Virus record (IMG/VR): IMGVR_UViG_3300020172_001601
Location: 248,001 to 312,000 of that record
Reading direction: 5' to 3' (one strand)
DNA: 64,000 bases
In this document: positions 9,387 through 25,355 of the stretch, piece by piece
Numbering within the stretch: position 1 is the stretch's first letter
Layout: each line of letters starts with the position of its first letter
Program-made: the position numbers and the translations under genes
Notes under the pieces: model-generated
Databases searched by the model: none
What the model was told of the DNA's origin: nothing
Seen by the model: only the letters and a program-made list of their open reading frames with translations

Positions 9387-9421
9387 ACAAAAAGGCCAGC
9401 AAGAATATTGGCCTTGTTTGT

Positions 9422-10246
9422 TTATAACAACTTAACCATACGACCGTAATCCATCCTAAGCCCCGCAAATATCTTCATCATTTCAGGATGCTTAATTCGA
9501 CACATCAAGCCGACAAAGACAGGATGAAATAACTGAGCCTGTATCAGACCACGCCAAGGATCAAGCCGCATCCACTCAGGCATTCGCTCACCAATACGAT
9601 ACATCCCCAAATGTATCCCGTGCGTCATCCTCCATCTGTGCCTCCGAGATAGATCACTCGACTCCTTCACCCCAATCCCAGCCTTCACCAAATGATATAA
9701 CAGCCGCTCATTCGCCATCAATGGATTCGTGCCAGATACCTGCATCGAAACCGGCGAAGCTATGTAAGACTCAATCACCGGCCCCATCTTCTCAAAATAT
9801 GGCTCGACCTCAAAGAAATGCCAGCCAGTCATGCAATCTGAAAATATTCCCTCTCGTACCACATTGGAATATGGGAAGCCATCATCAGCACATGCCGCTA
9901 ACTCCTGCTCCAACCAAGTCGGCGTCTCCAGATAATGTAAGAAATCCACGTCGCCTAACCAAACATACTTGAAATCAGCAAAATAAGACTTGGGCAACAA
10001 CCAACGCTCATACATCCCGTCAGGATACCCAGGTAAACCCAATGGCTTCTTCTCAATAACGTCGAACCGAGTAAACCCACAAGATCGCAAATGCTCAAAA
10101 CACTCACCCACGCAGGCATTCAAAGGCTCCAATAAGATAAACCTAACAAATGCCTCTGGATATGCCTGCAATACAGAAAATACATGAATCGGCATGAAAT
10201 ACTGATACCAGCCCCAGACAAGATATAAACATACAGTGTCTCTCAC
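9422..10246 (-). CDS. GT-A fold glycosyltransferase-like protein
   Basis: YVWLGDVDF DxD motif. Confidence 0.5.
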   Translation of the reverse strand: MRDTVCLYLVWGWYQYFMPIHVFSVLQAYPEAFVRFILLEPLNACVGECFEHLRSCGFTRFDVIEKKPLGLPGYPDGMYERWLLPKSYFADFKYVWLGDVDFLHYLETPTWLEQELAACADDGFPYSNVVREGIFSDCMTGWHFFEVEPYFEKMGPVIESYIASPVSMQVSGTNPLMANERLLYHLVKAGIGVKESSDLSRRHRWRMTHGIHLGMYRIGERMPEWMRLDPWRGLIQAQLFHPVFVGLMCRIKHPEMMKIFAGLRMDYGRMVKLL

Positions 10247-11568
10247 TACTTCACACCACGATTCACAAGATTAGATACAACAACCGATACCTTAGACCCC
10301 TCACCATCAGGCTCAAATTGTACCGATGTCCCATAATGATTCCCGCCACCTACCATATACACAATCTTGACATAGGTGCTGTTCGCCTTGACCTCAATAA
10401 CCGGCGATGATCCCACCTTGGCACCTAACTTCCTGCCCGGACCCTCACCCGTCACAAAATCCTTCCCAATCGCAGAACTCCAACCCGGAGATGAATCAGC
10501 CTGCAACAATGAACGATAAGCCGGAATCGTGTCAGCACCACCCGTAACCAATAACTCCAGCAATGCCGCAAACTTCTTAGGCTTGTTTGTATAATTCGCC
10601 TCTGCCGCTGCTTTCATCTGATCCAACAAATAGGCACGCTTCTCTGCCGCCTCATACAAAGGATTGCTGCCCATGTCCTTCATCGTCCTCAATACCCGAC
10701 GACCAGCACCCAATACAGATAATGCCTTCAATGGCCCTAAACTACGAACATCCACCTGAGTCTCCGTCACCGCCTTCAAACTGAATCCAACGTCAGATCG
10801 CATCCCAGGCAAATACTTCTCACAACCAATACGCAAATCTGCCGTATCTGACTTCAATCGAGCCGAATACTCTCCACCATCCCCACCCGTAAACTCAATA
10901 GAATCCACCACACATTGTCGAACTAATGCCATCGCCTTGCTGTGAATCAAATTCCCCATGCCCGTCTTGCCAGTCGCATGTTGCTTAATGAACTCAACCA
11001 CCAAACGACCTAAATTAGCCCCAACCTTGCCAGTAATCACACCACCTAATCTAGCCTGCTCCTGTAAGGCCCACGCTAAATCCTTCTGCCCCACAGCCTT
11101 TAACTTGAACGTCTGAACTAAAAAAGCAAATACCTCAACCTCAAACAATAAACCCATCTCCTTGCCCACTAACTGAGGTATCGAACGACGACCAGCATTC
11201 ATCCCCTTCTCAAATGCCGACGTGTCCTTGGCGTTCCAACCTAACCCCATCCCAGCCGCAGCCTGAACCGCTGCCTTGCCCTTCCAACCCTTCTCCGTTA
11301 CCTCGCCCAATAAAGGCCCAGAATGAGCCACAGAAGCCGCTAAAGCCATAGGTGCGACAGAAGACGCACCCACAGGAGAAACAGGCACAGAAGGCGTTAC
11401 AGGAGCTACAGAAGCTAAAGAACTGATAGAGACTGAGATGTAACCCTCAGATGGACGAATAGAAGCGGCAATACGAGACATAAGACCGGACATCCATGAG
11501 GCAACCTCACTCATCCCGCCCTCAGATGCTCCTAACCATTCTTTGAAATTACTCATGTTTTGTCTCAA
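10246..11568 (-). CDS. Hypothetical protein with N-terminal SNFKEWL motif (putative virion internal protein)
   Basis: 440-aa ORF; motif resembles T4 capsid-targeting sequences. Confidence 0.65.
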   Translation of the reverse strand: MRQNMSNFKEWLGASEGGMSEVASWMSGLMSRIAASIRPSEGYISVSISSLASVAPVTPSVPVSPVGASSVAPMALAASVAHSGPLLGEVTEKGWKGKAAVQAAAGMGLGWNAKDTSAFEKGMNAGRRSIPQLVGKEMGLLFEVEVFAFLVQTFKLKAVGQKDLAWALQEQARLGGVITGKVGANLGRLVVEFIKQHATGKTGMGNLIHSKAMALVRQCVVDSIEFTGGDGGEYSARLKSDTADLRIGCEKYLPGMRSDVGFSLKAVTETQVDVRSLGPLKALSVLGAGRRVLRTMKDMGSNPLYEAAEKRAYLLDQMKAAAEANYTNKPKKFAALLELLVTGGADTIPAYRSLLQADSSPGWSSAIGKDFVTGEGPGRKLGAKVGSSPVIEVKANSTYVKIVYMVGGGNHYGTSVQFEPDGEGSKVSVVVSNLVNRGVK

Positions 11569-11909
11569 TTAAAAGTTCTCCCAAAACCTCAATTCTGCCA
11601 ACCAATTTTTGAAATTTGGATTGATCCACTGTTTCAATTTCATTTATGTAAGAATGAAGTTCAAAACAGAGCTTTTTGTATTCACTCTTCATTTCTGCTG
11701 CTTTTAATTGACCCTTTGAAGCCTTCTCGTAATATGGCAACTTTACACGAAAATGGTCATGTGTCAGCAATGCAACACCACCCTTTTCCTTCGCCATATC
11801 CGAAATCTTTTTCGCACCCTCAAGCCTCTTTTTTGCAAATGATTCCAACTGGTCCTGATTTTCATTTAGCAAACCACTTAGCCTAAGTGTGTGTTCATTT
11901 ATTTCCATA
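11549..11909 (-). CDS. Hypothetical protein
   Basis: GAGG RBS before MEINEH; ORF track 11549-12013. Confidence 0.6.
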
Positions 11910-11922
11910 TTCCTCACCATGA

Positions 11923-12225
11923 TTAACAGTTCCAACGGTCTAATGCAGCGCCCTTTGCTGTTTTCTTGCCGTCTCTGGACGTAGGACCAGAAACACCACT
12001 CATCCTGGCACAAAAACTCTTACGTCTTTTGGCCTTTTTAGAATCAGGGTCCAATTTGGATGGAGCGTCGGTAACAGGTGGCTTCAAATTAGCACCTTCT
12101 TCCCTCTTAAACTTAGCACGACCCTTGGCATTTAAGCCGCCTTCCTTGCTGTGCCTGTCTGGATCGTAACCATGAAAAGGCTTTTCTCCCTCCATCATCT
12201 CTAACCATTCTTTGAAACTTTCCAT
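11923..12225 (-). CDS. Conserved phage basic protein (DUF6321-like)
   Basis: GGLNAKGR...NLKPPV...RRKSFCARM...RWNC pattern, recalled from phage proteins. Confidence 0.6.
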   Translation of the reverse strand: MESFKEWLEMMEGEKPFHGYDPDRHSKEGGLNAKGRAKFKREEGANLKPPVTDAPSKLDPDSKKAKRRKSFCARMSGVSGPTSRDGKKTAKGAALDRWNC

Positions 12226-13641
12226 TTAACGACCTCGACTCATTCTTATTTGATCTCGTACAGCATTAGCCTTTCTCTGAATTTCAGCTAATTCATCAGG
12301 ACTTAATCTGCTGGCTGGCCCACCATCATATAACCTGCCTTTAGGCAATGTTCCAGTCGTGTCAACGCCCGGTTCCTCTAATCCCGCAACAGGCTCCCCA
12401 ATATGACCGCCCCAGAATCGACCCGATGATTGCTGACTCGATGTCCCAGGAACATATTTGCCCGCTGGTGTATCAACTATGCTCTGACCAAGTTTAGTTG
12501 TCCCAGGACCACCAGGATTCGGATCAACCCAGCCAGTTGTCCCATCAGGACTAGAATAATGACCCTTGCCCTGAGATAAAAATCCCTTATCGACATTAGC
12601 ACCAGCATCAACAGCCGGACCAGCATCAACACTAGCAGTATCAACTCCCACCGAGGCAGCTACAGAATCTATCTCCTGACCCGACACAACTCCCGAATCC
12701 TTCAACCCACCAATCGCCTGAGATGCTATCCCGTCACCACCAGTCAAAGAACCATAGGCCATCCCAACGCCCGCTCCCAATAATGCCCCTACACTAAACA
12801 AAAATGCAGCCTTGCCTATCGCTAACTTGTTCTGAGATGCAAATTGAGATAAATCCCTAAACGAAGTCTTCAAAAGACCACCAACCTGACTCGATCCACG
12901 CTTCGCCTTGCCAGAGACATAACCAGCAGCCTTGCCTATTGCACCACCAACTTGATCCGCTCCCTTGTCCTTCCAATAATTGCCAGCCTGCTTAATCTTG
13001 TCCCCAAACCAACCCTCATGCAAATCCCGTAAATCCTTGTAGTCCTCGAAACTCGTCCATGATCGCTGTAAACCAGATACCCGACCACCATTCCAATCAG
13101 CACTCCCAGGTAATATCAATCGACTAGGCTGAGATGGAGCAGCAGGAGTAGCCGCAACAGGCGCAGGAACAGGAGCCGCAGCCTTCTTGCCAGTCAATCC
13201 AAGTTTTTCCGCACCCTTGTCAAATGCCTTGCCCGCAACATTATTGACCTGCTTGCGAACAAAATATAACAAGGCAGCAAATGGCACAGCCCCAGGACCA
13301 CCCACAAGACCAGCCGTGATTATGGCAGTCGCAAGTGTCAATGGTATCCCTAACTTCTCAGAATACTGCTTCGCTACACCACTCGCCTTCTGAATGGCAG
13401 GCAATACCTTAGATGAATACTTCTCGTAATCCTCGCCACGCTCTTGAGGAACCGAATTCTTTGCATATTGACTCTGAAACCCCTGCTTCATCGAATCAAA
13501 GAATCCTTCATCCAGATCACGATGGGCAATATAAGCCCTGAATCCCTCAGAAGCTACACAATTAGGCACTGTCTTGCCACCCTTTTTCTTAGAACCAACC
13601 ATCTTATAGCCAGTCCAACATGGATCGTTTTTCATTACCAA
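12226..13641 (-). CDS. Putative virion internal/membrane-associated protein
   Basis: N-terminal PCWTGY...VPNCV phage motif; two F..Y...DLxEG repeats; two hydrophobic segments. Confidence 0.65.
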   Translation of the reverse strand: MVMKNDPCWTGYKMVGSKKKGGKTVPNCVASEGFRAYIAHRDLDEGFFDSMKQGFQSQYAKNSVPQERGEDYEKYSSKVLPAIQKASGVAKQYSEKLGIPLTLATAIITAGLVGGPGAVPFAALLYFVRKQVNNVAGKAFDKGAEKLGLTGKKAAAPVPAPVAATPAAPSQPSRLILPGSADWNGGRVSGLQRSWTSFEDYKDLRDLHEGWFGDKIKQAGNYWKDKGADQVGGAIGKAAGYVSGKAKRGSSQVGGLLKTSFRDLSQFASQNKLAIGKAAFLFSVGALLGAGVGMAYGSLTGGDGIASQAIGGLKDSGVVSGQEIDSVAASVGVDTASVDAGPAVDAGANVDKGFLSQGKGHYSSPDGTTGWVDPNPGGPGTTKLGQSIVDTPAGKYVPGTSSQQSSGRFWGGHIGEPVAGLEEPGVDTTGTLPKGRLYDGGPASRLSPDELAEIQRKANAVRDQIRMSRGR

Positions 13642-15041
13642 TTGTCTCCAAATAAACTAGGCTGCAATGCAGCATTACGACGCTTCTTAGCCTTCTTGCC
13701 ACCTAATTCCATACGCTGCTGAATAATCGAACGAATATGGTCAGGGTCAACAGTACCACCAGCACCCAATGCAGGCGATAAATAATGCAAGGCAGTCGGC
13801 TGACTACCTAAATTCTGATCCAATGACCGACCATCCGGCCCCTTGCGGAACTTAACCGCACGAGCAGCTAATTCCTGCGGATCAGTCACCAAAGAAGCAG
13901 GCTTCTCAATCCCACCACGAGAATACAAGTTGTAGAAGTGCTTCAAAGCATCATCCGGGTCCATCAATGAATGCGTAGCCGATGCACCCATCCCCAACTT
14001 GCCACCAGCCAATGGCACCATCACACCACCACGATCCTTCCCAATACCCAACTTCGGTATCTTGATCCCCTTCATGGAGTCATACTCAGGAGCATCCTTG
14101 TCCAATGCCCCACCCTGCATGTCGTAATACCCCTTGCCGTGATGAGTCACCATAACATACATGGTTTCCACGAAATCAACCCACACATCCCATAACTGCT
14201 TAGTCCCAATGCCACGGGAAGATAATTTGTTCAATGTTTGCACATATCGCTCTGCCCCACCCTTCGGCTTACCCCATGACTTCTCATCGAAATCACCAGC
14301 CTTGTCCATGTCCGGGAATACTTTGCTATAAATGTCAATGTTGTGAGTGTCAATACAGCCAGCACGTCCCCATAACAATTGAGCAATAAACCCAGCCTTA
14401 ACCGGCTGAACTCCCTTAATCATGGATAAACGCTTAATCAACTGCGTGTCGTCACCACCCTTGGCTATTCCATTTAGTTCATGAAATAGATTGTCCTTGT
14501 TAGACCAAATGTCCGCAATAGTGTCTAACTTGAACCCACCAATCGTATGGGCCAAAGCATGATACTTGTCACCAAATGAATCCACAGCATGTTCAATCTC
14601 CTGACGAGTCACCCGCTCAGGGAACTGATGCTTCAATATCGCCATCAGCATGTAATAGTTGTCCCAATGCTTCGCAAATGGCACATTCGCAGACAATGGA
14701 CTAAACATTAACACCTGAGCGAAATTGGCCGGGGAACTCTTGGCAAATGCCTGAATAGCCCCAATGTGAGAAGCATATCCAGATAATGGCGTAATCTGAC
14801 ACGATCCACCCTCGTCACCCACTAACTTGTCTACCTTCTGCTCAGGATCGGCACCAGCATCCTCGTCCCCAAATAAATTGGGATCGCCACCCTTCTTAGG
14901 CGTAAAATCCATCCCAGCTAACTGCCTGCGATTCACTCGCCCCTCATTCAACCAAGAGGATACCTCAGACATCAATGAGGAAAGAATGTATCCCCCAAAT
15001 GCCTCGTCGTCACTCATCCACTCTTTGAAATTACTGGTCAT
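13635..15041 (-). CDS. HhH-GPD/glycosylase-superfamily-like protein
   Basis: KGVQPVKAGFIAQLL...CIDTHN resembles HhH followed by catalytic Asp; N-terminal SNFKEWM. Confidence 0.5.
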   Translation of the reverse strand: MTSNFKEWMSDDEAFGGYILSSLMSEVSSWLNEGRVNRRQLAGMDFTPKKGGDPNLFGDEDAGADPEQKVDKLVGDEGGSCQITPLSGYASHIGAIQAFAKSSPANFAQVLMFSPLSANVPFAKHWDNYYMLMAILKHQFPERVTRQEIEHAVDSFGDKYHALAHTIGGFKLDTIADIWSNKDNLFHELNGIAKGGDDTQLIKRLSMIKGVQPVKAGFIAQLLWGRAGCIDTHNIDIYSKVFPDMDKAGDFDEKSWGKPKGGAERYVQTLNKLSSRGIGTKQLWDVWVDFVETMYVMVTHHGKGYYDMQGGALDKDAPEYDSMKGIKIPKLGIGKDRGGVMVPLAGGKLGMGASATHSLMDPDDALKHFYNLYSRGGIEKPASLVTDPQELAARAVKFRKGPDGRSLDQNLGSQPTALHYLSPALGAGGTVDPDHIRSIIQQRMELGGKKAKKRRNAALQPSLFGDNW

Positions 15042-15465
15042 CTTCTTCAATCCCCTTTGCTGTTGGCAGAATAATTGCATGCGCCCGTCCCACACCGTCT
15101 ATCCCAGCCAGTAACTCCCGATCAAATGCCGCCTTCATCTTCGGATAACGGAATGCAGATGCCTTCTCCCGTGCCTTCGCAAAGATGTCCCGTAATTGAC
15201 CGTGAATCCCCTGTAAACTCTGAGCAGATTGTGCTATATCTGGATCAATAGGCTTAGTTTGACTAGAACCAGGACGATAATCCACCGTCTTGTCCGACAT
15301 AGCATTGTCAGTCGATGCAGAACCCCTAGCCGCCATAGCAGCCTGACTCTGATCCGATGGAGTGTACCGAGATGGCACATACTCATGCGTCTTGTCCGGG
15401 TCGTAAACTTGAGCCGGAGCAGCTTGTAACTCCAACCATGTGGTGAATGATCGTATTTTTCCCAT
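15031..15465 (-). CDS. Hypothetical protein
   Basis: N-terminal RSFTTWLE motif; first gene of the minus-strand cluster. Confidence 0.6.
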   Translation of the reverse strand: MGKIRSFTTWLELQAAPAQVYDPDKTHEYVPSRYTPSDQSQAAMAARGSASTDNAMSDKTVDYRPGSSQTKPIDPDIAQSAQSLQGIHGQLRDIFAKAREKASAFRYPKMKAAFDRELLAGIDGVGRAHAIILPTAKGIEEDDQ

Positions 15466-15511
15466 ACGCTATATAGAGAAAGATTAAAGAAATGACCACT
15501 CAATATATTGG

Positions 15512-15745
15512 AAGCCCAGCTATCTCCACAAGCTATCTCCACAAGGATATAGCCCCAGCTATCTCCACGAGCTATATCCTCAAGCCCAGCTATCTCTGCG
15601 CAGAGTATTCCACAAGCTAAATCCAGAGCTATGTCCCAAGCCGCCCACCCACACCCCAGCTTGTGAATGCCTCATGACCTAACGTGTGAAGCACCACTAC
15701 CCTAGTGTGTGAAGCCCTATAGAGACGCTATGTGAAGCCCTCACC
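15512..15745. repeat. Iteron-like short direct repeats (AGCTATCTCCACA-type, then TGTGAAGC-type)
   Basis: About 6 imperfect agctatctccaca copies in 15518-15640; tgtgaa(g)c x4 in 15662-15741. Confidence 0.65.
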
Positions 15746-15843
15746 ACTAGCGCCCCAGGTATTAAAAGACGCTATTAACGAAAAAAGGGGCCAATTTAAG
15801 GCCCCCTTACGCAATCCTCAACAATACCTGAATCAACCACCAC

Positions 15844-16674
15844 TCATTCCCGGAAAGCCCGCAAATGCCCCTGAACCTTCTCCTCAATACTTCCAGGCAA
15901 TACACCAATTGAATCCCATGTGAACAACTTACCAGAGGACTTGGTGTTTTTCATTATTTCCTCAATCACCTTATCCCATCGCTCCATCAACCGCTGGCCA
16001 CTCTCCTTCTCCACACGGCACTTCTCCAATTCAGCAGCAACCTTCAAATAACGCACCATAATCATGTTGGCACTGTCACAATCCAGTGTGGGATCACATA
16101 ACTGGTCATTCATCTTGTCCCATTCATTAAACAAATAGGCAAACCTCGCCTCCAATTGAGCCACCCGATCCTTCATCGCCATGTAATCCCCATTAGGCAT
16201 AGGCTCCAACTCAGGCAACTCCGGCCTGCTCTGGTCTGTCTCACCAGTTAATATGCCACGCAACTCACCAAACCCCACCGTGTCCTGCACATCACAGGAT
16301 CGACGCAAGGAACGCTCCGTTGGACCCATCTTGCTGCCTTGTGTTTTCATCTTGATGACCTCGAAAGCATATAAAGATTCAGGGTTGATACCCAGCCACT
16401 TAAAATACCCAATCTGATTTCCTAACTCCTTGGCATTCACTGATAAACCATATAACTTCCCGCCAGAATCCAAAGACAACCGAGAGTCATGCGGCCAATC
16501 CCACTCCTGAAACCCACGAGGAGGCATCTGGTGAACCAGTAATATGTCACCGTGATCCAGCGATAACCGATGTATTAAATCAGGTGATAATGCCCAATGA
16601 GCGGCTGTCTTGAAACACACCACCATCCCCCGATTGTGTGAAGATACCAAACCACGATATGTCGCTAAATTCAT
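15844..16674 (-). CDS. Hypothetical protein
   Basis: GAGGGG RBS; C-terminal coiled coil. Confidence 0.65.
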   Translation of the reverse strand: MNLATYRGLVSSHNRGMVVCFKTAAHWALSPDLIHRLSLDHGDILLVHQMPPRGFQEWDWPHDSRLSLDSGGKLYGLSVNAKELGNQIGYFKWLGINPESLYAFEVIKMKTQGSKMGPTERSLRRSCDVQDTVGFGELRGILTGETDQSRPELPELEPMPNGDYMAMKDRVAQLEARFAYLFNEWDKMNDQLCDPTLDCDSANMIMVRYLKVAAELEKCRVEKESGQRLMERWDKVIEEIMKNTKSSGKLFTWDSIGVLPGSIEEKVQGHLRAFRE

Positions 16675-17271
16675 CCCAATCCCCTCATGATATTAACACC
16701 AGATGGCATCCTACCAAATCCAGGCAACTTTCCCAGACCAACCCCAGGCTCCGGCAACAAAAGCTCCAAAAACACCCTTTTTTCATGTCGGACGTAAACC
16801 CAATGTGTGAAGGCACTTAGGACACGTTGATGGGAAGTGATGGATTTTAGAGGTAGGAAGGGCCTAGCCAGCCTTTCATTGTGTCCTTTATTCCCCCATA
16901 TCCCCCAGGGAAAAAGTTCCAGAGGCGTATTTGATGAATATTGGAAAGAAAATGTATATCGTTGTGAAGCGATATATGAAAAACAAAAAGAAATGTGTGA
17001 AGGGAAAAGTATCCAAGGGGATCATGATATATTCAGGACCAACTAAGGACACAATAAGGCAACGATATATTTTTCAATATTGAGTTCTAAGGTAACGCTG
17101 CCTTATCTTACCTTTAGTTTTTGTTAGTTGCCCTTGATTGCCTTTTGATTGCCTTCGCTGACTTTGTTGCCTTTTCGTCCTGGATCGCCGCCTTTAGTTG
17201 ACTATTGTTGGCTTTTGGCCATTTAGGTCTATTGTACCCTTGCTTTTAGCCAATGGATGATTGGTGTGCCG

Positions 17272-17308
17272 AAGGGAGCAGTTAGGGGAACCGACTGCTC
17301 CCTTTTTT
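17272..17308 (+). terminator. Intrinsic terminator
   Basis: gggagcagtt...gactgctccc followed by T6. Confidence 0.8.
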
Positions 17309-17535
17309 GTTGCATAACGGGTACAAATGAGGTCAGGTCTATTGTACCCTAGCGGGCTGTTCGTATTTTCGGGTTTGGTTGGAGTCAGCGATGGTCACAT
17401 GCTCATATTGTGGTGGCAAAGGATATGACGTAAAGGACGTGCCGGGGACGAGCAAGCAGTGTCCTGTTTGCAAGGGTTCGGGAGAAGTGAAGCGTTAGGT
17501 CTGGTGTACCCTGGGAGTTGTCGGAAGAAATCGAC

Positions 17536-17565
17536 TTGAACCAAACATGGGTTTGGCTCTCTAGG
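17536..17565 (+). promoter_or_regulatory. Second motif class TTGAACC-N14-CTCTCTNGG (also at 19917, 20581, 24581)
   Basis: Four copies with an identical 14-nt spacing and unrelated spacer sequences. Confidence 0.75.
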
Positions 17566-17583
17566 TGTTTCAGGAGACAATAA

Positions 17584-18681
17584 GTGCTGCAACAAAACCA
17601 ACGCATCTTCTTCGGCCCGAAAGACCCTTGGGGTCATACGGAGCCGAGTGAGGAGCAACGTCGGGAAGCTGTATCCCGGACGAATGTGGCTTCGCCGTTC
17701 GCCAAGTTCATTGGGAACGACAAGGCTATTCGTAAATTGCAAACCGCTGCGTACAAGGCATTGGGTCAGTTCAACCATATGATGCGGGATTTGGCATTTG
17801 CCATTTTTGGCCCGTCATCGGCTGGGAAGACCACCATTGCCCGGTTGTATGCTGAGGTTGTGGAGCTTCCGTTTGTCGAGATCAGCCCGAAGGCGATCAA
17901 GACGGTGGACGATTTGTTCAAGGAAATCAGTCGGGTATTGGCCGAAGCTGGCCTGCCGCTGGTGGAAGTGATTCGTCGTGGTCATTACGTTCTGCCTCCT
18001 GTGGTCATCCTGATTGACGAAGTTCATGCTTTGTCGGATGGGGTTGTGCAGGGGTTGCTGAAGGCAACGGAATACAATGACGCAATGATGGCTACGGAAT
18101 CGGGCAAGACGGTGAACACCCACAATGTAACGTGGATGATTGCCACGACCGATGAAGGGAAGCTATTTGATGCTTTCCGTACTCGGTTCAGCCCGGTGAA
18201 CCTGAAGTATTTGGGCAAGGCCGATGTTGCCAAGATCGTTAAGCTGGCGAACCCAGATTTGAGCGATGATGTGTGCAGCATGGTTGCCCATTACAACAGC
18301 CGTATTCCTCGCAAGGCATTGGAATTCGCCCGGTATATGCGCCTGGTGAAAGATATGTCAGGCGGGACGTGGGAAGAGGTTGCCCGGCAGGTGGCCGAGG
18401 ATGAAGAGATTGACGAGCATGGGATGCACGCCGTCCATCTGAAGATTCTTCGGGCATTGGGTCAGGGGCCGATTGCCCGGAACCGTATTGCATTGGTGGC
18501 TGGGCGTAAGGATGAAGAGGTTGAGAAGTTCATCCTGCCTTGGTTGTTGACTGAGACTGACGATCAGGCCGCTTTGGTGACTGTATCCAGCAAGGGCTAT
18601 ACAATTACTGAGGCTGGGCTTGCTGAGTTGGAACGGCGGGCGATCAACCACAAGGGCGAGAAGGCTCTTGTGGCGGCTTAG
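17584..18681 (+). CDS. ruvB: RuvB-like AAA+ ATPase (Holliday junction branch migration)
   Basis: FIGN, GPSSAGKTT, IDEVH, ATT..G.L...RTRF, PRKA sensor, C-terminal wHTH with GP...E....PWL...KG..IT; order matches RuvB. Confidence 0.85.
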   Translation: MLQQNQRIFFGPKDPWGHTEPSEEQRREAVSRTNVASPFAKFIGNDKAIRKLQTAAYKALGQFNHMMRDLAFAIFGPSSAGKTTIARLYAEVVELPFVEISPKAIKTVDDLFKEISRVLAEAGLPLVEVIRRGHYVLPPVVILIDEVHALSDGVVQGLLKATEYNDAMMATESGKTVNTHNVTWMIATTDEGKLFDAFRTRFSPVNLKYLGKADVAKIVKLANPDLSDDVCSMVAHYNSRIPRKALEFARYMRLVKDMSGGTWEEVARQVAEDEEIDEHGMHAVHLKILRALGQGPIARNRIALVAGRKDEEVEKFILPWLLTETDDQAALVTVSSKGYTITEAGLAELERRAINHKGEKALVAA

Positions 18682-18799
18682 GAAAATATCAACACGCTGC
18701 ATATTGGGCGGTAGTACCTGGGGGACCAGCGAATCATCGGTGTCGAGGCCGACGTGTTGACTTTAGGTCTAGTGTACCCTGGCTGTCGGAGGAACAACA

Positions 18800-19270
18800 A
18801 TGAATACCAGAGTTGAAAAGCTGACGGCCAAGGTTGCTGCGGTGAATCGGGCCAACGAGTATGCGGCACGGTTATATGCTGCACTCGTCGAGAAGTTTGC
18901 CCCATTGGTTGGGCAGAAGATTCTCAAGGTAGATGGCACGCTGCTCGCCAAGTATGAGGGGCTGGTGCCGGTGCTGCCTTGTTCGCCCGATCTGCACGTT
19001 TACCGGCATTCGTCCGACTATTCGTTGGCGTGGACTGTGAAGACCTGCGAGTTCATGCCGCCGCATAGCTGCATGTACCATGAGGTTACGGTTTATGTCG
19101 GCGATCTTCGGGGTGCGACCTTGGAGAAGATGACTGTCCATCCGTTCACGGGTCGCACGGATTATTCTGTGGAAGAGATCACGGCGAAGCGGTTGTCGTA
19201 TGAGTCGGCGAAGCGGGTGGCCGATGAGCTTCGGGGCGAATTGTATCCTTTTGGGGAGGACGACCGATGA
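18800..19270 (+). CDS. Hypothetical cassette protein
   Basis: Motif, then GGAGG RBS. Confidence 0.8.
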   Translation: MNTRVEKLTAKVAAVNRANEYAARLYAALVEKFAPLVGQKILKVDGTLLAKYEGLVPVLPCSPDLHVYRHSSDYSLAWTVKTCEFMPPHSCMYHEVTVYVGDLRGATLEKMTVHPFTGRTDYSVEEITAKRLSYESAKRVADELRGELYPFGEDDR

Positions 19271-19410
19271 AGCGGATCAAGAAGACATATAAGACGCTCA
19301 AGCAGGCCGAGCGTTATCAGAACCGATTGTACAACAAATACAACTCGGTTCAGTTGGTTTCGTTTCCTCGATTCAGTGAGGACGGCGAGTACGTTTGGGA
19401 AGTGGCTTAG
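19267..19410 (+). CDS. Small hypothetical protein (47 aa)
   Basis: GGAGG RBS, ATGA overlap, stop is the motif TAG. Confidence 0.65.
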   Translation: MKRIKKTYKTLKQAERYQNRLYNKYNSVQLVSFPRFSEDGEYVWEVA

Positions 19411-19461
19411 GTCCAGTGTACCCTAGTGGGTGTTCGATTCAAAATCACACAGGAGAGTTCG

Positions 19462-19914
19462 ATGCCTTATGTTCCGAAGCACTTGGAGTTCTTGTCTCAT
19501 TCTGGAACTGCGGACGGCTGGCCCGCTGGGATAACTGAGGTTGGCAAGGAGTTTGCCACCAAGCGGGTTGCTGCTGGCTTGGAGAAGTATGGCCAGTTGA
19601 CGCTGGACACGGCGAAGGGTTGCATTTTCGATCATTACATTGACCGGGAGCCGGTGCCGGAAGAGTTGAAGGGTGTGACGTGGGATTGGTTGTATGGTGT
19701 GACGCATCGGGCGTTGCTGGCGGCATCAGCGCAGCAGGTGTGGGTGGCCGAGAAGTCTTACGTCAAGAAAAAGAAGACGAAGAAGGAATGGCATCCGGTG
19801 GCGGTGAGTCGTGCCGACGTTGAGGCACTGGAGACGGCGGGGACGGTGACGTTGGGTGTGACGGGTGAGCGGGTTCGGGCTTTGGCTGGTGTTCTTGGTC
19901 AACTGGTCAAATAG
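19462..19914 (+). CDS. Hypothetical cassette protein
   Basis: AGGAG RBS. Confidence 0.75.
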   Translation: MPYVPKHLEFLSHSGTADGWPAGITEVGKEFATKRVAAGLEKYGQLTLDTAKGCIFDHYIDREPVPEELKGVTWDWLYGVTHRALLAASAQQVWVAEKSYVKKKKTKKEWHPVAVSRADVEALETAGTVTLGVTGERVRALAGVLGQLVK

Positions 19915-20176
19915 CGTTGAACCAAACAACCTCTCAACTCTCTTGGGTATTGTAAGGGGTTGAGAGTTTACTTCGGATCGGTCAAACAGGGCGGGTGATC
20001 TTCGGACTGCCGCCGAGTTTTGTGAACGAGTAAAACATGCACTGGCCGTAGTTCGTGCGGGAGTGAGTCCCGCTTGGGTCACAGGACCGACCCTAGCAAG
20101 TGGTCCCTGCCAGTAGAACGCCGAACCGGGCAACAACCCATGCAATACACTTCTGGATTTTTTCTCTTCTTTTGTT

Positions 20177-20221
20177 GAAACGTCCGGGAGGCCCAGCACG
20201 TCTGCCTCCCGGACGTTTTTG
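20177..20221 (+). terminator. Intrinsic terminator
   Basis: aaacgtccgggaggc...gcctcccggacgtttt. Confidence 0.85.
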
Positions 20222-20300
20222 TTTGCTCACCAAGGGTACAAATGGGCTGAGGTCTATTGTACCCTAGTCGGCGTCAACGCAACTTTTCAAAGGGAATGAA

Positions 20301-20534
20301 ATGATTCGAGAAGCAAAGTGTATTGGTGTTGAGGGTGACGAAGACGGCGAGTTCAGTGATCTGGTCGGTACTTCGGGCAAGCTGCGGCTTGACGACAAGA
20401 GTACGGACAGTGCCGTGAACTGGTTCAATGGTGGTGGATCGGTCAACTTCACTCGTCGCCGGGTGGCTGAGAAGGATGGCGTGGTGAAGGTATTCACGAA
20501 GTTGGGGAACGTCTTCAAGTTCAGATTGGTTTAG
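20301..20534 (+). CDS. Hypothetical cassette protein
   Basis: Stop is the motif TAG. Confidence 0.7.
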   Translation: MIREAKCIGVEGDEDGEFSDLVGTSGKLRLDDKSTDSAVNWFNGGGSVNFTRRRVAEKDGVVKVFTKLGNVFKFRLV

Positions 20535-20634
20535 GTCCAGTGTACCCTAGCTGGTGTCGGAAAGAAAAAAAGAGATCGCCTTGAACCAAGTGTTTGGTTG
20601 GCTCTCTCGGATAGAACACACAGGAGACTTTACG

Positions 20635-22218
20635 ATGGCTGCGTTTTTGATGATTCAGAACCCCGGTGTTGCTCCCGAAGAGGCTTTCACTCTGTTGGGT
20701 GCTTCAACCAAGCGGGACAGTGAAAACGGTGCGACGATTGGTAAGTTCGGTACGGGGAACAAGCACGGTGTTGCGGTTCTGCTTCGCAACCAGTTGAGTC
20801 CTGTGGTGTTTGCGGGGAATTTGAAGCTGGAGTTCGGGACTCGCCAACAGCCGGTGAATGACGGGATCAAGAATACCGTCTTCAACCGTGTTGTGGTGAA
20901 GTTTGGCGGCAAGGACCGGGCGGGTGTATCACGTTCGGCGACGGAAGACCTTGGCTTCGTTCTGGAGCATGGGTCGGCAGACTGGCTGTCCGTGGATTTG
21001 GCCCTTCGTGAGTTCGTGTCCAACTCTTTGGACCGAGCTATTGAGGAAGGGGAAGTTCAGTTCGTCCATCAGTACATCACGTCCCGGTCCTTGGAGTTTC
21101 AGCAGGCTGCTGCCATCAAGGGATCGTATGAGAATCGGGAGATTGCCGATGCTCTGGCGATCTATCGCAAGACTTCGACGGACTACAAGAACGTCGTGGT
21201 TGAAGTGGTGAATGATGGTCAGGTTCGGGCGAAGGCGGGGCATACTCGCATCTTCATCCCGTTGACTGTGGAAGTGCTGGCCTTCTTCAATGATTTGGGC
21301 AAGTGGTTCCTGCACTTCAGCGAGCCGGAACTGTTGAACAAGACGATTCTGCCGAAGTCGAATCGTAACCTTGGGGATCGTCGGTCGGCTGTGATATATC
21401 GTCGTGGTGTTCGTGTTCGGGAATTCGAGTCATCGGATACGCCGAGCCTGTACGACTACAACTTGGAGAATCTGAAGCTGGACGAATCCCGTCGTGTGGA
21501 CGATTGGTATGTCCAGTATGAAGCGGCGGCGGCTTTTGCTGCTGCTGACGTGGAAACGGTGTCCCGGTTGTGGCAGTCGTTCCTTGACGGTCAGAAGTAT
21601 TGGGAGCATAGCTTCCAGTCCTATGGGCTGGAGACTGGCATCCACAAGGAAGAACAGAAGGCAGTATGGACGAAGGCATTCGAGAGCGTGGCTGGTGAGA
21701 ACGCTGTCGTCTCAACTGAGGAAGGCGGGCAGCAGGCTGCTCGTAAGGGCTTCAAGGTTGTGACTGCACCGCAGGCGTTTGTGCAAGCTGCCGAGAAGCA
21801 TGGGGTTCGCACTCCTGCCAAGGTGTTGTCTGAGGACGAACGGGCTGGCCGGACGATCTTCGATGCAACGCCGGATGCCGAGGCTGCTGTCGAGTTTGCA
21901 TGGTATTTGGTCAACAAGTACGGGGTCACGAATGGCAAGAACAAGCCGGTTGTGAAGACGTTCCGAAAGATCATGGATGCCGGGTCGCAGACGTTGGGGT
22001 TCTACAAGGATGGCGTGGTGTACATCAACCAAGACATTGCAGCGAGTGGTTCGCTGTCTCTTGGGTGGCATTCACTGACTCAGCAATTGCTGGTGACGGC
22101 AATTGAGGAAGTGGCACACCATGTCACGGGAGCTACGGACAACAGCCGGGACTTCCAAGACTTCCTGTTGAATCTGGTGGTCTACATGGCGAAGGAACTG
22201 TCAGGTGTGACGTTCTAA
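20635..22218 (+). CDS. GHKL (HATPase-like) ATPase with C-terminal zincin-like segment
   Basis: GASTK...IGKFGTG and ALREFVSNSLD; C-terminal EEVAHH; AGGAG RBS before ATG 20635. Confidence 0.75.
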   Translation: MAAFLMIQNPGVAPEEAFTLLGASTKRDSENGATIGKFGTGNKHGVAVLLRNQLSPVVFAGNLKLEFGTRQQPVNDGIKNTVFNRVVVKFGGKDRAGVSRSATEDLGFVLEHGSADWLSVDLALREFVSNSLDRAIEEGEVQFVHQYITSRSLEFQQAAAIKGSYENREIADALAIYRKTSTDYKNVVVEVVNDGQVRAKAGHTRIFIPLTVEVLAFFNDLGKWFLHFSEPELLNKTILPKSNRNLGDRRSAVIYRRGVRVREFESSDTPSLYDYNLENLKLDESRRVDDWYVQYEAAAAFAAADVETVSRLWQSFLDGQKYWEHSFQSYGLETGIHKEEQKAVWTKAFESVAGENAVVSTEEGGQQAARKGFKVVTAPQAFVQAAEKHGVRTPAKVLSEDERAGRTIFDATPDAEAAVEFAWYLVNKYGVTNGKNKPVVKTFRKIMDAGSQTLGFYKDGVVYINQDIAASGSLSLGWHSLTQQLLVTAIEEVAHHVTGATDNSRDFQDFLLNLVVYMAKELSGVTF

Positions 22219-22319
22219 CATCAATTGAGCCTGTGTGTGACGGACGGGGGACTGCCAACCCCGTCCGTTTTTTTGTTTATTGCGGTAGGTCTATTGTACC
22301 CTGGGTGGTGGAGGGACAA

Positions 22320-22577
22320 ATGAGAAAACGAATCGTGTTGAATGGTCGGAACGAATACGATGGAAGTCCATCGCATTACTGTTTTGATTTCGATGTCAAG
22401 TTCAATCGGCATGGCAACATTGAAGTGATTGTTGACAAAACGTCATCTTCGTTTGTTTCCTTTTTCCGTGCTGGCAAGTACGTCTTCACTCGGTCGGGCT
22501 TTTGCATTTCGCATCCTGCATCGGAGCGATATCGCTATCACAAGGTCAATGCCGAACTGGTTGAGAGTCACACATAG
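22320..22577 (+). CDS. Hypothetical cassette protein
   Basis: GGAGG RBS; stop is the motif TAG. Confidence 0.7.
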   Translation: MRKRIVLNGRNEYDGSPSHYCFDFDVKFNRHGNIEVIVDKTSSSFVSFFRAGKYVFTRSGFCISHPASERYRYHKVNAELVESHT

Positions 22578-22608
22578 GTACAGTGTACCCTAGTGGGTGG
22601 AGGATAAC

Positions 22609-22812
22609 ATGAAATATGAAAAGTGGATAAGAGATCATCTTTGTGATGTTCATTTTCAGAGCAATGGTTCTACGGGTGGTTGGACTGTTAAGACTTGGGT
22701 TGGCTTTGTGAATGGCTTTATTACAACGGAACATTTTGGTTCTTTGCCGCCTGTGATGGACGAAGTGGTTGAATCTATTCTTAGGAAGGTTGGAAGCAAT
22801 GACGAACGATGA
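22609..22812 (+). CDS. Hypothetical cassette protein
   Basis: GGAGG RBS. Confidence 0.65.
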   Translation: MKYEKWIRDHLCDVHFQSNGSTGGWTVKTWVGFVNGFITTEHFGSLPPVMDEVVESILRKVGSNDER

Positions 22813-23020
22813 ATTTGAAGAGTTGCAGTCTGAAGCTGGCGACTTGGAAGGTCAGTTGGACGAAGCGAAGGATCACTTGAGTAGTGTCACGAGTTGCGAA
22901 ACGCAATCGGACTTCAAGGCGAACCTTACTGAGCTACGGCAAACTCTGACTGTGCTATTGGCTGAAACCACTGATTTGTGGCAGCGTGCTGGTGGTCGTC
23001 CTGTTCGGAAAGCCAAATAG
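22799..23020 (+). CDS. Small coiled-coil protein
   Basis: Stop is the motif TAG. Confidence 0.65.
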   Translation: MTNDEFEELQSEAGDLEGQLDEAKDHLSSVTSCETQSDFKANLTELRQTLTVLLAETTDLWQRAGGRPVRKAK

Positions 23021-23044
23021 GTCCAGTGTACCCTAGAGGGCATC

Positions 23045-23374: not shown

Positions 23375-23425
23375 CTCCAGTGTACCCTAGTGGGTGTTAC
23401 TTCAACAATTCACGGAGACTATGCG

Positions 23426-24255: not shown

Positions 24256-24308
24256 GTCCAGTGTACCCTAGTGGGTGTTCCAACAACGAAACCTTTCTGG
24301 AGGATGCG

Positions 24309-25306: not shown

Positions 25307-25355
25307 GTCCAGTGTACCCTACGGGGTGTGACACTGATTACACCTTTTACGGAGA

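What the first reader, a model, noticed from the sequence alone, without database searches (positions are those of the whole stretch)
15480..17230. Sharp strand-composition switch and iteron-like repeats: candidate origin or genome end
Seen: the + strand looks strongly C/A-rich up to ~16.8 kb, even in + strand genes at 0.3-5 kb, and G/T-rich from ~17.1 kb. The non-coding gap 16.7-17.2 kb is AT-rich, with an inverted pair attgtgtcctt (16878) / aaggacacaat (17045) and TTGCC repeats. AGCTATCTCCACA repeats lie at 15.5 kb and about 8 TGTGAA(G) words at 15.66-17.0 kb. Genes diverge here. Inference: a bidirectional replication origin, or the junction of the physical genome ends with the array as first-injected DNA.
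Basis: partly seen in the sequence, partly recalled or inferred. Interest (0 to 1): 0.6.

Follow-up and report, generated by a model that had tools for sequence, protein, structure and literature searches.

The report
Candidate replication origin, huge freshwater phage
A 1.9-kb mostly non-coding stretch of a huge freshwater phage carries conserved repeat arrays exactly where the DNA strand composition flips, regardless of gene direction, in this and related phages, which most likely marks a two-way replication origin that can be mapped from sequence alone.

Summary
The window lies in a 340-kb contig of an uncultured huge phage, and the largest GC-skew step of the whole contig falls at window ~16.8-17.2 kb (z 6.7). 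The flip is not a gene-direction artefact. Counting + strand genes only, third-position skew is negative for ~20 kb to the left and positive for ~12-16 kb to the right, fading to background on both sides. Two related phages (381 and 532 kb) show their largest step at the same locus, and at least six further lineages in metagenomes show a step there. Orthologues that sit far from the locus in a relative lack the skew. Recent synonymous changes on the right arm are strand-asymmetric (C>T 4.6 times G>A). At the flip lie nine same-strand TGTGAA(G) boxes (0.3 expected), a 13-bp tandem array of variable copy number, a 17-nt core identical in a 35%-GC relative, an AT-rich patch, and non-coding blocks better conserved than the flanking genes. 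Best reading: a bidirectional replication origin (0.58). No initiator was identified; the neighbouring AAA+ protein is a RuvB homologue. Physical genome ends could not be tested because no raw reads were available.

The parts
15518..15600 (+). Tandem array of the 13-bp unit AGCTATCTCCACA, about 5 copies, with variable copy number.
   Evidence: L103 has about 8 copies, and the strain in run X5 lacks one unit through a 13-nt deletion at 15534. Related units are found in other lineages: ATACTCTACACAAC x5 in L120 and the reverse-complement core GAGATAGCT x10 in L125.
15662..15736 (+). Four TGTGAA(G) boxes spaced exactly 23 bp apart (15662, 15685, 15708, 15731).
   Evidence: The block is 95.8% identical to L102, against 88.1% for the adjacent gene.
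15784..15808 (-). Intrinsic-terminator-like hairpin with a T-run, placed after the 276-aa gene.
15844..16674 (-). 276-aa ORF of unknown function lying between the two groups of boxes. It is intact (280 aa, 81% aa identity) in the close relatives L102 and L103 and was not found in G002-G006.
   Evidence: The AF2 model is unusable (pLDDT 41).
16637..17001 (+). Four more TGTGAA boxes, at 16637, 16806, 16963 and 16996. The 16963 box is absent from L102/L103.
16777..16801 (.). The switch point: cumulative keto minimum at 16777 and cumulative G-C minimum at 16801.
16860..16876 (+). Conserved core GGGCCTAGCCAGCCTTT, present once in the contig.
   Evidence: The same 17-mer occurs in G005 at 270,151-270,167. 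In 2.9 million viral contigs it occurs only in the G005 lineage. TAGCCAGCCTT is present in G006 at about 212,744. The core is invariant in L102/L103, while the 29 nt to its left (16831-16859) are only 48% identical.
16878..17055 (.). The 11-bp inverted pair ATTGTGTCCTT / AAGGACACAAT, which brackets the AT-rich patch and two boxes.
   Evidence: Both arms are conserved in L102/L103. By my own estimate the pair is not beyond chance on its own.
16940..17120 (.). AT-rich patch (68-72% AT in 60-bp windows; GC 35% over 16900-17099), a candidate unwinding element.
   Evidence: The stretch 16951-17100 is 97.7% identical to L102.
17003..17017 (+). Remnant of the 5' end of a tRNA-Tyr gene.
   Evidence: The 15 nt are identical to the start of the intact tRNA-Tyr(GTA) at L048 6137-6221. 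ARAGORN calls no tRNA here.
17128..17155 (+). Short TTGATTGCCTT tandem, 2-2.5 copies.
   Evidence: Weak.
17225..17511 (+). Three tandem rightward promoter-like elements (AGGTCTATTGTACCC at 17225 and 17335; the variant AGGTCTGGTGTACCC at 17497). A hairpin with T-run lies at 17272-17310 and a 35-aa zinc-ribbon mini-ORF at 17391-17498.
   Evidence: The hairpin is I9. The 54 nt after the first element and the mini-ORF are missing in L102/L103.
17584..18681 (+). RuvB-homologue AAA+ ATPase, the conserved right-hand neighbour of the switch in all relatives.
   Evidence: AF2 pLDDT is 93.8. The top 43 PDB fold matches are all RuvB (E 6e-19).
17225..45149 (+). Module of small genes, all rightward, with about 58 forward copies of AGGTC[TC]A[TG]TGTACCCTAG..., two inverted copies at its right edge (45073, 45135) and raised GC (0.50-0.56 in 2-kb windows, against about 0.47 in most of the contig).
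   Evidence: The core TGTACC[CT]TA is confined to the equivalent module in G005 (68 of 72 copies) and G006 (16 of 18).
1..33000 (.). Extent within the window of the strand-asymmetric composition gradient. It reaches about 25 kb left of the switch, beyond the window start, and about 16 kb to the right.

Best explanation
Window 15.5-17.3 kb is the cis-acting region of a bidirectional replication origin of a huge freshwater phage, whose full genome is probably about 490 kb by my own arithmetic from the 69% completeness estimate.

Shown: the DNA-strand composition flips at 16.78-16.80 kb in a way that depends on position and strand, not on gene direction. The sign is the one expected if forks leave this point in both directions, so that on each arm the parental strand that serves as lagging-strand template is more often single-stranded, loses C and gains T. 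Current synonymous substitutions on the right arm have that asymmetry.

Inferred: an unidentified initiator binds the same-strand TGTGAA(G) boxes and/or the lineage-specific tandem array. The conserved core at 16860-16876 together with the AT-rich patch at 16940-17120 is where the duplex opens. The three tandem rightward promoter-like elements at 17225-17511 may activate or prime the rightward start.

The asymmetry fades over about 15-25 kb on each side instead of spanning the genome. I infer that origin-derived forks account for fork direction only near the origin. Either most replication starts elsewhere (recombination-dependent starts, as I recall for T4), or this origin re-fires and its forks travel only a limited distance.
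For: 1. The largest upward skew step of the whole contig is here (z 6.7), and the same is true at the homologous locus of G006 (212,700; z 5.8) and G005 (267,900-269,600).

2. With + strand genes only, median GC3 skew is:
- G000: left -0.22, right +0.20, distant +0.01 (p 7e-8 and 3e-6).
- G006, where genes on both sides are + strand: left -0.36 against distant -0.06 (p 3e-12). The skew deepens steadily towards the switch (Spearman rho -0.81).
- G005: right +0.57 (p 2e-7).

3. Fourfold-degenerate sites flip. In G000 they go from A .45 C .26 G .12 T .17 to A .10 C .19 G .44 T .27. In G006 they go from C .61 G .09 to G .53 C .30. Both return to background by about 16-25 kb.

4. Left-arm + strand genes of G006 were verified by family or homology: the PAPS-reductase-like gene (phrog_424, 7.9e-33, GC3 skew -0.48) and the genes at 202,2xx and 203,5xx.

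5. Orthologues that sit elsewhere lack the skew. G006 203,588-204,205 has -0.36, while its G000 homologue 96 kb from the switch has +0.14. Window 13635..15095 has coding-strand skew +0.41, while its G006 homologue 56 kb from the switch has -0.11.

6. Polarised synonymous substitutions on the right arm: C>T 0.116 per site against G>A 0.025 (Fisher p 1e-7), and G>T 0.042 against C>A 0.009.

7. A step lies 0.3-2.5 kb upstream of the RuvB-like gene in the L102/103/148, L120, L123/125, L128/149, L135, L139 and L140 lineages. Six of these are independent of G000, since L102/103/148 are its close relatives. Apart from those close relatives, each carries its own tandem repeat array at the step.

8. 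TGTGAA is the top shared enriched word in an unbiased k-mer screen of five relatives, and the enrichment is not compositional.

9. Non-coding blocks are more conserved than the flanking coding DNA: 95.8-97.7% against 88-93%. The 17-nt core is identical between genomes of 47% and 35% GC.

10. An AT-rich patch lies next to the core.
Against: - No replication assay, coverage gradient or read-end data exist. All available public runs were assembled contigs.
- No initiator was identified. The conserved neighbour is a RuvB homologue, not a DnaA-, Orc- or Rep-type initiator. The 276-aa ORF is lineage-specific and uninformative.
- There is no DnaA-box enrichment.
- No PolA, PolB or DnaB hits were found in the 69%-complete contig.
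- The skew is local, not genome-wide, which a single classical origin does not predict and which needs an added assumption.
- On the right arm, and on the first 8 kb of the left arm in G000, transcription direction predicts the same sign. Only the + strand genes further left, and G006, discriminate.
- The step is absent at this locus in some relatives (L110, L116, L111, L132, L141, L142 and LR756511.1).
- G006 has only one inverted pair of TGTGAA boxes.
- The polarised spectrum rests on parsimony with a 76%-identical outgroup.
Confidence: 0.58

Rival explanations
1. The region is only a transcription control region: the left boundary of an early or host-takeover module, facing a divergent leftward operon. 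The boxes are operator or activator sites, and the skew comes from transcription-associated mutation and codon usage in very highly expressed genes.
For: About 58 forward promoter-like elements begin exactly at 17,225, and the module is conserved in G005 and G006. Genes diverge here in G000. The strongest skew in G000 lies in genes whose coding strand is the G/T-rich one. Variants of the promoter's downstream part read GGTGTGAAG, resembling the boxes. L132 has 8 forward boxes but no skew step. Nearly all module proteins are small and of unknown function, as I would expect of early genes.
Against: Genes on the + strand left of the switch have the opposite sign on their coding strand: G000 window 0-9 kb, and G006 188-212 kb with C .61 and G .09 at fourfold sites. 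Skew on the right decays to zero and below while promoter density stays constant or rises. Relocated orthologues lose the skew. A control region is compatible with an origin, so this is a rival only in its 'nothing but' form.
Confidence: 0.2
2. The locus is the junction of the physical genome ends (a pac or terminal-repeat boundary) in a permuted contig. The right-hand module would be the first DNA to enter the cell, and the asymmetry would come from replication starting at the ends.
For: The sign of the skew also fits strand-displacement synthesis starting at both ends (my inference). The right flank is collinear in all relatives, while the left flank differs between lineages. In run X3 nothing is laid left of 16,682 although the DNA to the right is near-identical. 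Several long contigs end within 0.05-2.1 kb upstream of the RuvB-like gene: L105, L107, L114, L127, L121, L150, L151 and L161. That is 8 of 22 contigs that end within the 10-kb upstream window, against about 4.6 expected (my count from the table). An early-gene-like module at an entering end has precedents that I recall in T7, T5 and SPO1.
Against: Many independent contigs read through the locus, including G000, G005, G006, L102, L103, L148, L120 and L149, which requires terminal redundancy. Conserved non-coding blocks lie on both sides of the switch. By my own reasoning, 5'-to-3' resection at ends, the usual fate of phage ends, predicts the opposite skew sign. Contig ends here are equally explained by tandem repeats, the repeated promoter element and strain variation (the joints are all at promoter copies). 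No end repeats were found on G000, G005 or G006.
Confidence: 0.12
3. The locus is a mosaic junction between modules of different evolutionary origin. The composition step reflects foreign DNA, and the repeats are recombination scars.
For: The right module has higher GC and GC3 than the rest of the contig. Synteny breaks on the left. A 29-nt patch beside the core is replaced between close relatives, and the region carries insertions and deletions.
Against: Raised GC covers the whole module, but the skew decays within it. The left-arm gradient runs through genes that have ordinary composition in relatives. The same architecture is kept in genomes of 35%, 47% and 52% GC. The recent substitution spectrum is itself asymmetric.
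Confidence: 0.07

Closest known systems
Iteron-type theta origins (phage lambda ori; iteron plasmids such as R6K and pPS10; the origin of the PLE satellite of phage ICP1, PMC7145576)
   Same: Arrays of same-orientation short repeats next to an AT-rich patch. The repeats differ between lineages while the architecture is kept. The non-coding DNA is under constraint.
   Different: No cognate Rep- or O-type initiator gene was recognised beside or around the repeats. The boxes are 6-9 nt words at irregular spacing, apart from the four at 23 bp, rather than 17-22 bp units. A second repeat class, the 13-mer array, varies in copy number.
Bacterial oriC as located by the cumulative GC-skew minimum, and the GC-skew-based origin calls for huge phages in Al-Shayeb et al. 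2020 (PMC7162821: about 30% of genomes show bidirectional patterns)
   Same: The skew changes from negative to positive at the site. The G/T-rich strand is the one with the leading-strand sequence on both arms.
   Different: The signal is a local V of about 40 kb with very steep amplitude (fourfold-site G .44-.53), not an origin-to-terminus pattern over the genome. There is no DnaA-box enrichment.
Phage T7 primary origin (two tandem phage promoters plus an AT-rich region) and the T4 origins (promoter-primed R-loop origins oriF/oriG; oriE with iterons). Cited from memory, not checked in a paper here.
   Same: Tandem phage-specific promoter-like elements stand beside an AT-rich patch. As I recall, T4 combines origin-dependent starts with recombination-dependent replication, which would explain a skew confined to the neighbourhood of the origin.
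   Different: The AT-rich patch lies upstream, not downstream, of the promoter-like elements. No T7-type RNA polymerase was found in the partial contig, and that search was uninformative. Promoter function is inferred only.
Promoter-early stem-loop cassettes of the hyperplastic regions of T4-type phages (Arbiol et al. 2010; from memory). This applies to the adjacent module, not to the origin.
   Same: Many small genes are each preceded by a conserved promoter-like element. Eleven of the 12 exact forward copies directly follow a terminator-like hairpin or T-run.
   Different: The element is a conserved word of about 28 nt that does not resemble a sigma-70 promoter, and its density is about one per 480 bp.

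Membership tests
Iteron-type replication origin | Three or more direct repeats in one orientation clustered in non-coding DNA, beyond chance | tested here: met
   There are 9 TGTGAA boxes, all on the + strand, against 0.31 expected (0 of 2000 shuffles). The 13-mer array has 5.2 copies. Comparable arrays occur in six or more related lineages.
Iteron-type replication origin | Adjacent AT-rich unwinding element | tested here: met
   16940-17120 reaches 68-72% AT, in the top 0.8% of 60-bp windows of the contig. Unwinding itself was not tested.
Iteron-type replication origin | Cognate initiator (Rep/O-type) encoded in cis | tested here: inconclusive
   The right neighbour is a RuvB homologue. The 276-aa ORF between the repeat groups has no family match and gave no usable model.
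Iteron-type replication origin | Supports initiation of DNA synthesis | not testable with these tools
   This needs marker-frequency sequencing, 2D gels or a plasmid assay.
DnaA-dependent oriC-type origin | Cluster of DnaA boxes (TTWTNCACA) | tested here: not met
   There are no exact matches and 5 one-mismatch matches in 2 kb, against about 3.2 expected from the genome density.
DnaA-dependent oriC-type origin | Global minimum of cumulative GC skew | tested here: not met
   The minimum is local. The step itself is the largest of the contig.
Replication origin defined by strand-compositional asymmetry | A skew sign change that does not depend on gene orientation, with the polarity expected at an origin | tested here: met
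   Shown by the analyses restricted to + strand genes in three genomes, the relocated orthologues and the polarised substitutions.
T7-type promoter-primed origin | Tandem phage-polymerase promoters next to an AT-rich region, and a phage single-subunit RNA polymerase | tested here: inconclusive
   Three tandem promoter-like elements lie at 17225-17511. PF00940 was not found, but the control genomes did not respond either and the contig is only 69% complete.
Physical genome terminus (pac/cos or terminal-repeat boundary) | Pile-up of read starts, or a twofold coverage step | not testable with these tools
   All 23 runs are held as contigs only, and no molecule ends were reported.
RuvB family (neighbouring gene 17584..18681) | AAA+ base, lid and C-terminal winged-helix domain with a full-length RuvB fold | tested here: met
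   phmmer matches RuvB over residues 39-344 (E 2e-8). Foldseek's top 43 matches are all RuvB, with TM 0.62-0.79. Walker A and B motifs and sensor residues are conserved in 35 homologues.

The most novel reading that the evidence does not exclude
A clade of huge freshwater phages carries a fixed origin whose activity leaves a steep, symmetric mutational mark of about 40 kb. Fourfold sites reach more than 50% G on one strand and flip within a few hundred bases. The mark arises because origin-derived forks, or a long-lived single-stranded bubble or repeated re-firing, dominate only locally, while the rest of the roughly 500-kb genome is copied by starts with no fixed direction. If so, the shape of the skew decay would reveal the replication mode of uncultivated huge phages from sequence alone. 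The boxes, the core and the lineage-specific arrays would be the binding sites of an initiator class not yet described.
Probability: 0.3. Interest if true: 0.7.

Novelty: new variant of a known kind. Interest (0 to 1): 0.6.

Why it matters
I know of no replication origin of a huge phage (over 200 kb) that has been mapped experimentally; they are inferred at best from genome-wide skew. Here a precise locus, narrowed to a few hundred bases, is supported by evidence independent of gene direction, by conservation across lineages of 35-52% GC, and by a present-day asymmetric mutation spectrum. That gives a concrete target for cloning, DNA-binding and marker-frequency experiments. The local, decaying form of the asymmetry is unusual. 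It bears on how half-megabase phage genomes are copied, whether from one origin or mostly through recombination-dependent starts. It also warns that skew steps in phages have to be tested with genes of one orientation before they are read as origins. The adjacent module, with a promoter-like element in front of nearly every small gene, is a separate and easily testable regulatory system.

Tried and rejected
1. Read-end and coverage tests. All 23 runs found are stored as assembled contigs. Read laying showed only which runs hold the stretch, plus joints caused by the repeated promoter element. It gave no information on termini or on a coverage gradient.

2. AAA+ neighbour as initiator. Rejected. 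Sequence and fold both say RuvB, not Orc/Cdc6, DnaA or a clamp loader.

3. DnaA boxes. Not enriched.

4. Sigma-70 promoters. None were called inside 15.4-17.3 kb, and the 9-19 kb scan found fewer than shuffles give (8 against 12.9).

5. A conserved hairpin around the core. The extended stem I drew in G000 (GAAGGGC/GCCTTTC) is broken in L102/L103 with no compensating change, so I dropped it. The outer AGGACAC/GTGTCCT arms are conserved but do not vary, so they are uninformative.

6. Known RNA families in 15.4-17.6 kb. None; the only hit is a chance mir-205 match (E 0.25).

7. The 276-aa ORF. It has no Pfam, PHROG or Atlas lead. The AF2 model has pLDDT 41 and was not searched further.

8. GenBank phages. 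There is no nucleotide match. The nearest record, LR756511.1 (595 kb), shows no flip at its RuvB-like gene.

9. T7-type RNA polymerase, PolA, PolB and DnaB. None were found in the 69%-complete contig. The RNA-polymerase search was uninformative because its controls did not respond.

10. Assembly chimera. Rejected, because contigs from three other samples span the junction.

11. End repeats on G000, G005 and G006. None found.

12. My first, length-only ORF picking gave wrong-strand calls in GC-rich DNA. I replaced it with a codon-model caller and checked key genes by homology.

13. Left-arm polarised substitutions. Not possible, because no close relative plus outgroup covers the + strand genes at window 0-9 kb.
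Full report
**Setting.** The window is bases 248,001-312,000 of a 340,341-bp linear IMG/VR virus contig with a CheckV completeness estimate of 69%. Most genes lie on the + strand. Public runs that hold the stretch are freshwater, lake and sediment metagenomes. The nearest GenBank phage is LR756511.1, an uncultured 595-kb phage, with 48% aa identity in the AAA+ gene. The window therefore belongs to an uncultured huge phage.

**The observation.**
- GC skew in 2-kb windows runs from -0.24 to -0.34 at 9-17 kb and from +0.19 to +0.23 at 17-22 kb.
- The cumulative G-C minimum is at 16,801 and the keto minimum at 16,777.
- Over the whole contig the feature is a local V, not a genome-wide inflection. 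Skew is about +0.07 over 0-245 kb, negative only over 245-265 kb, and +0.17 to +0.20 over 265-280 kb.
- The step is nevertheless the largest of the contig by far: +0.47 (z 6.7), with the next best at +0.12.
- The repeats are as described. The 13-bp unit AGCTATCTCCACA has 5.2 copies. There are nine TGTGAA words, seven of them TGTGAAG, all on the + strand, and the first four are spaced exactly 23 bp apart. Block shuffles that keep local composition give 0.31 on average, and 0 of 2000 reach 9.
- The 11-bp inverted pair is exact, but by my estimate it is no more than chance on its own.
- The TTGCC repeats are weak.
- AT-richness is confined to 16,940-17,120.

**Is the flip only a change of gene direction?** In G000 genes do diverge here: - strand genes run 9422..16674 and + strand genes start at 17391. 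Real genes also have G-rich first codon positions. I therefore called genes with a codon model, checked key calls by homology, and looked at third positions only, expressed on the + strand.
- In G000, + strand genes far from the locus have GC3 skew near 0. The + strand genes 0-20 kb to the left have a median of -0.22 (p 7e-8), and those 0-12 kb to the right have +0.20 (p 3e-6). AT3 skew shifts in the opposite direction.
- At fourfold-degenerate sites the + strand goes from A .45 C .26 G .12 T .17 (0-4 kb left) to A .10 C .19 G .44 T .27 (0-4 kb right). Composition is back at background by about 16-25 kb on either side.

**Relatives.** I fetched two long relatives in full. G005 is 381 kb with 35% GC, and G006 is 532,729 bp with 52% GC and a CheckV estimate of 100%. 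Their RuvB-like genes are 64-66% identical to the window's.
- In both, the largest upward skew step of the whole record lies just upstream of that gene: G006 at 212,700 (z 5.8) and G005 at 267,900-269,600.
- G006 is the cleanest case, because genes on both sides are on the + strand. GC3 skew falls from -0.06 to -0.56 between 180 and 212 kb and then jumps to +0.11. The fall is steady (Spearman rho -0.81, p 2e-11). Fourfold sites reach C .61 and G .09 on the left.
- The strand of the G006 left-arm genes was checked. One is a PAPS-reductase-like gene (phrog_424, 7.9e-33) with GC3 skew -0.48, and several others have + strand homologues in G000.
- The same genes have ordinary composition where they sit elsewhere. 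G006 203,588-204,205 (8 kb left of the switch) has -0.36, and its G000 homologue 96 kb away has +0.14. Conversely, window 13635..15095 has coding-strand skew +0.41, and its G006 homologue 56 kb from the switch has -0.11.
- The asymmetry is therefore a property of position and DNA strand, not of the proteins or of the direction of transcription.

**A wider sample.** A metagenome search with an alignment of the RuvB-like protein returned 80 loci.
- Lineages with at least 59% identity often show a step 0.3-2.5 kb upstream of the gene. These are L102/103/148 (0.45-0.51), L120 (0.35), L123/125 (0.40), L128/149 (0.42), L135 (0.68), L139 (0.44) and L140 (0.34).
- Others show no step: L110, L116, L111, L132, L141 and L142. 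LR756511.1 shows none either.
- Apart from L102/103/148, which are close relatives of G000, each lineage with a step has its own tandem array at the step: ATACTCTACACAAC x5 (L120), AAGAGATAGCTCAAA x10 (L125, which contains the reverse complement of G000's AGCTATCTC), AAACCTGATCCC x8 (L135), CATCACAAAA x7 (L139) and GTCACCAATAT x5-7 (L140).
- TGTGAA(G) was the top shared enriched word in an unbiased k-mer screen of five relatives. It is significantly enriched in G005, L120, L132, L117 and L119. G006 has only one inverted pair.

**Constraint on the non-coding DNA.**
- Against L102, which is about 85-93% identical overall, the TGTGAA x4 block is 95.8% identical, 16860-16950 is 96.7% and 16951-17100 is 97.7%. 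The 276-aa gene is 88.1% and the AAA+ gene about 93%.
- The 17-mer GGGCCTAGCCAGCCTTT (16860-16876) is identical in G005. In 2.9 million viral contigs it occurs only in the G005 lineage. G006 keeps TAGCCAGCCTT.
- The 29 nt immediately to its left are replaced between close relatives (48% identity).
- The 13-mer array varies in copy number: about 8 copies in L103, and one unit fewer in run X5.

**Is the asymmetry still being made?** I polarised substitutions on the right arm in G000 and L148, with L105 as outgroup. At synonymous third positions, C>T occurs at 0.116 per C site against G>A at 0.025 per G site (ratio 4.6, Fisher p 1e-7). G>T occurs at 0.042 against C>A at 0.009. Deamination of C and oxidation of G are, as I understand it, the typical damage to single-stranded DNA. 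The + strand to the right of the switch is thus the more exposed strand, as expected for the lagging-strand template of a rightward fork. The caveats are that the outgroup is only 76% identical and that, on this arm, transcription predicts the same direction.

**Interpretation.**
- The polarity (C/A-rich to the left, G/T-rich to the right on the + strand) is that of an origin, not a terminus.
- Resection of fixed double-strand ends would give the opposite sign (my reasoning).
- A purely transcriptional cause fails for the + strand genes on the left arm.
- Foreign origin of the right-hand module fails because GC3 stays raised across the whole module, while skew decays within it and also extends into the left arm.
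- I therefore read 15.5-17.3 kb as the cis region of a bidirectional origin. It comprises the boxes and tandem array, the conserved core, the AT-rich patch and three tandem rightward promoter-like elements.
- The fade of the asymmetry over 15-25 kb is unusual. My inference is that forks from this origin determine fork direction only locally. Either most synthesis starts elsewhere without fixed direction, or the origin re-fires and its forks travel a limited distance. This is not shown.

**What is missing.** No initiator was found.
- The conserved neighbour (17584..18681) is a RuvB homologue by sequence (E 2e-8 over its full length) and by fold (pLDDT 93.8; the top 43 PDB matches are all RuvB).
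- The 276-aa ORF that sits between the two box groups is intact in close relatives (81% aa identity). It was not found in G002-G006 and could not be characterised.
- DnaA boxes are not enriched.
- Physical ends could not be tested. That reading keeps some weight because the left flank is not syntenic between lineages, run X3 lacks the left flank, and contig ends are mildly over-represented just upstream of the RuvB-like gene (my count).

**The neighbouring module.**
- The 15-mer AGGTCTATTGTACCC occurs 12 times on the + strand between 17,225 and 44,555 and once inverted at 45,135, and nowhere else in the 340 kb.
- Allowing mismatches gives about 58 forward copies of AGGTC[TC]A[TG]TGTACCCTAG.GGGTGT.., roughly one per 480 bp, placed about 20-25 nt before start codons. 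Eleven of the 12 exact forward copies directly follow a terminator-like hairpin or T-run.
- The core TGTACC[CT]TA is confined to the equivalent module in G005 (68 of 72 copies) and G006 (16 of 18). The fragment G001 shares the 15-mer and is collinear with window 28-48 kb.
- The module is made of small genes of unknown function and has raised GC in all three genomes.
- It looks like a phage-specific promoter regulon whose left boundary is the origin region. Promoter function is inferred.

**Verdict.** The origin reading is the best supported at about 0.58, and the genome-end reading is untested. In kind this is a phage origin with repeat arrays and strand asymmetry, so it is a variant of something known. 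The local, steep, clade-conserved mutational gradient and the unidentified initiator make it worth an experiment.

Noticed in passing
window 17225-45149 (+): About 58 forward copies of a conserved element of about 28 nt, AGGTC[TC]A[TG]TGTACCCTAG.GGGTGT.., stand in front of nearly every small gene of a 28-kb module. Two inverted copies mark its right edge, and there are none elsewhere in the 340 kb. The core is confined to the same module in G005 and G006. It is probably a phage-specific promoter regulon; no matching RNA polymerase or sigma factor was identified.
   Followed up: partly
window 17000-45000; G005 270-320 kb; G006 212-235 kb: The same module has raised GC and GC3 in three genomes of very different base composition (G000 GC3 about .63-.73 against about .5; G005 up to .63 against .28; G006 .83 against .65). 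This is separate from the skew, which decays inside the module. The cause is unknown.
   Followed up: partly
window 39491-39628 (+): An Rfam tRNA match (32.5 bits, above the gathering score) stretches over 138 nt, which would be a tRNA gene with an insertion of about 65 nt. ARAGORN and the whole-window Rfam scan both missed it.
   Followed up: no
window 17003-17017; L048 6137-6221: These 15 nt are identical to the 5' end of an intact tRNA-Tyr(GTA) that sits in the homologous intergenic region of a relative, so G000 seems to keep only a remnant. The window also encodes a tyrosyl-tRNA synthetase (53241..54341, -), a CCA-adding enzyme (58298..59914, -) and a PNK/HAD-like protein (57600..58202, -).
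   Followed up: partly
window 17391-17498 (+): A 35-aa mini-ORF has two CxxCxGxG motifs (DnaJ-type zinc ribbon) and sits between the second and third promoter-like elements. It is absent from the close relatives L102 and L103.
   Followed up: no
window 17225-17310 (+): The first promoter-like element is followed after about 45 nt by a perfect 11-bp hairpin and a T-run, which would give an RNA of about 70 nt with no ORF. Fifty-four nt of it are deleted in L102/L103, so it is probably dispensable.
   Followed up: no
window 16831-16859: A 29-nt patch directly left of the invariant core is only 48% identical between G000 and L102, while the flanks are 93-97% identical. It looks like a replaced segment.
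   Followed up: no
window 14300-16682 (run X3): In one independent freshwater run, unitigs near-identical to the window were laid from 16,682 rightward, and nothing was laid to the left. This suggests a strain with a different left flank, that is, a mosaic boundary at the start of the 276-aa gene.
   Followed up: no
window 12226-13641 (-): The N-terminal motif DPCWTGYKMVGSKKKGGKTVPNCV of a 471-aa Gly/Ala/Ser-rich protein matches several PHROGs of unknown function, mostly over residues 5-31 only. The leftward block 9422..15465 consists of such proteins with no family assignment.
   Followed up: no
window 48300-49199 (+): A 299-aa ORF matches only part of the terminase large-subunit profiles (phrog_5989, 1e-27). 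Its homologue lies at the very start of the G005 contig and at 318 kb in G006. It may be a split or partial terminase gene.
   Followed up: no
G000 contig 1-100 and 340,215-340,341: The contig begins inside a repeat that reads to me like collagen-type Gly-X-Y coding sequence, and it ends in a 33-bp tandem repeat. Both ends therefore look like assembly breaks at repeats, not genome ends.
   Followed up: no
G006 212,470-212,498: The only TGTGAAG boxes of G006 form a perfect palindromic pair, GCTTCACA-N13-TGTGAAGC, about 250 bp left of its skew switch and inside a predicted small ORF.
   Followed up: no
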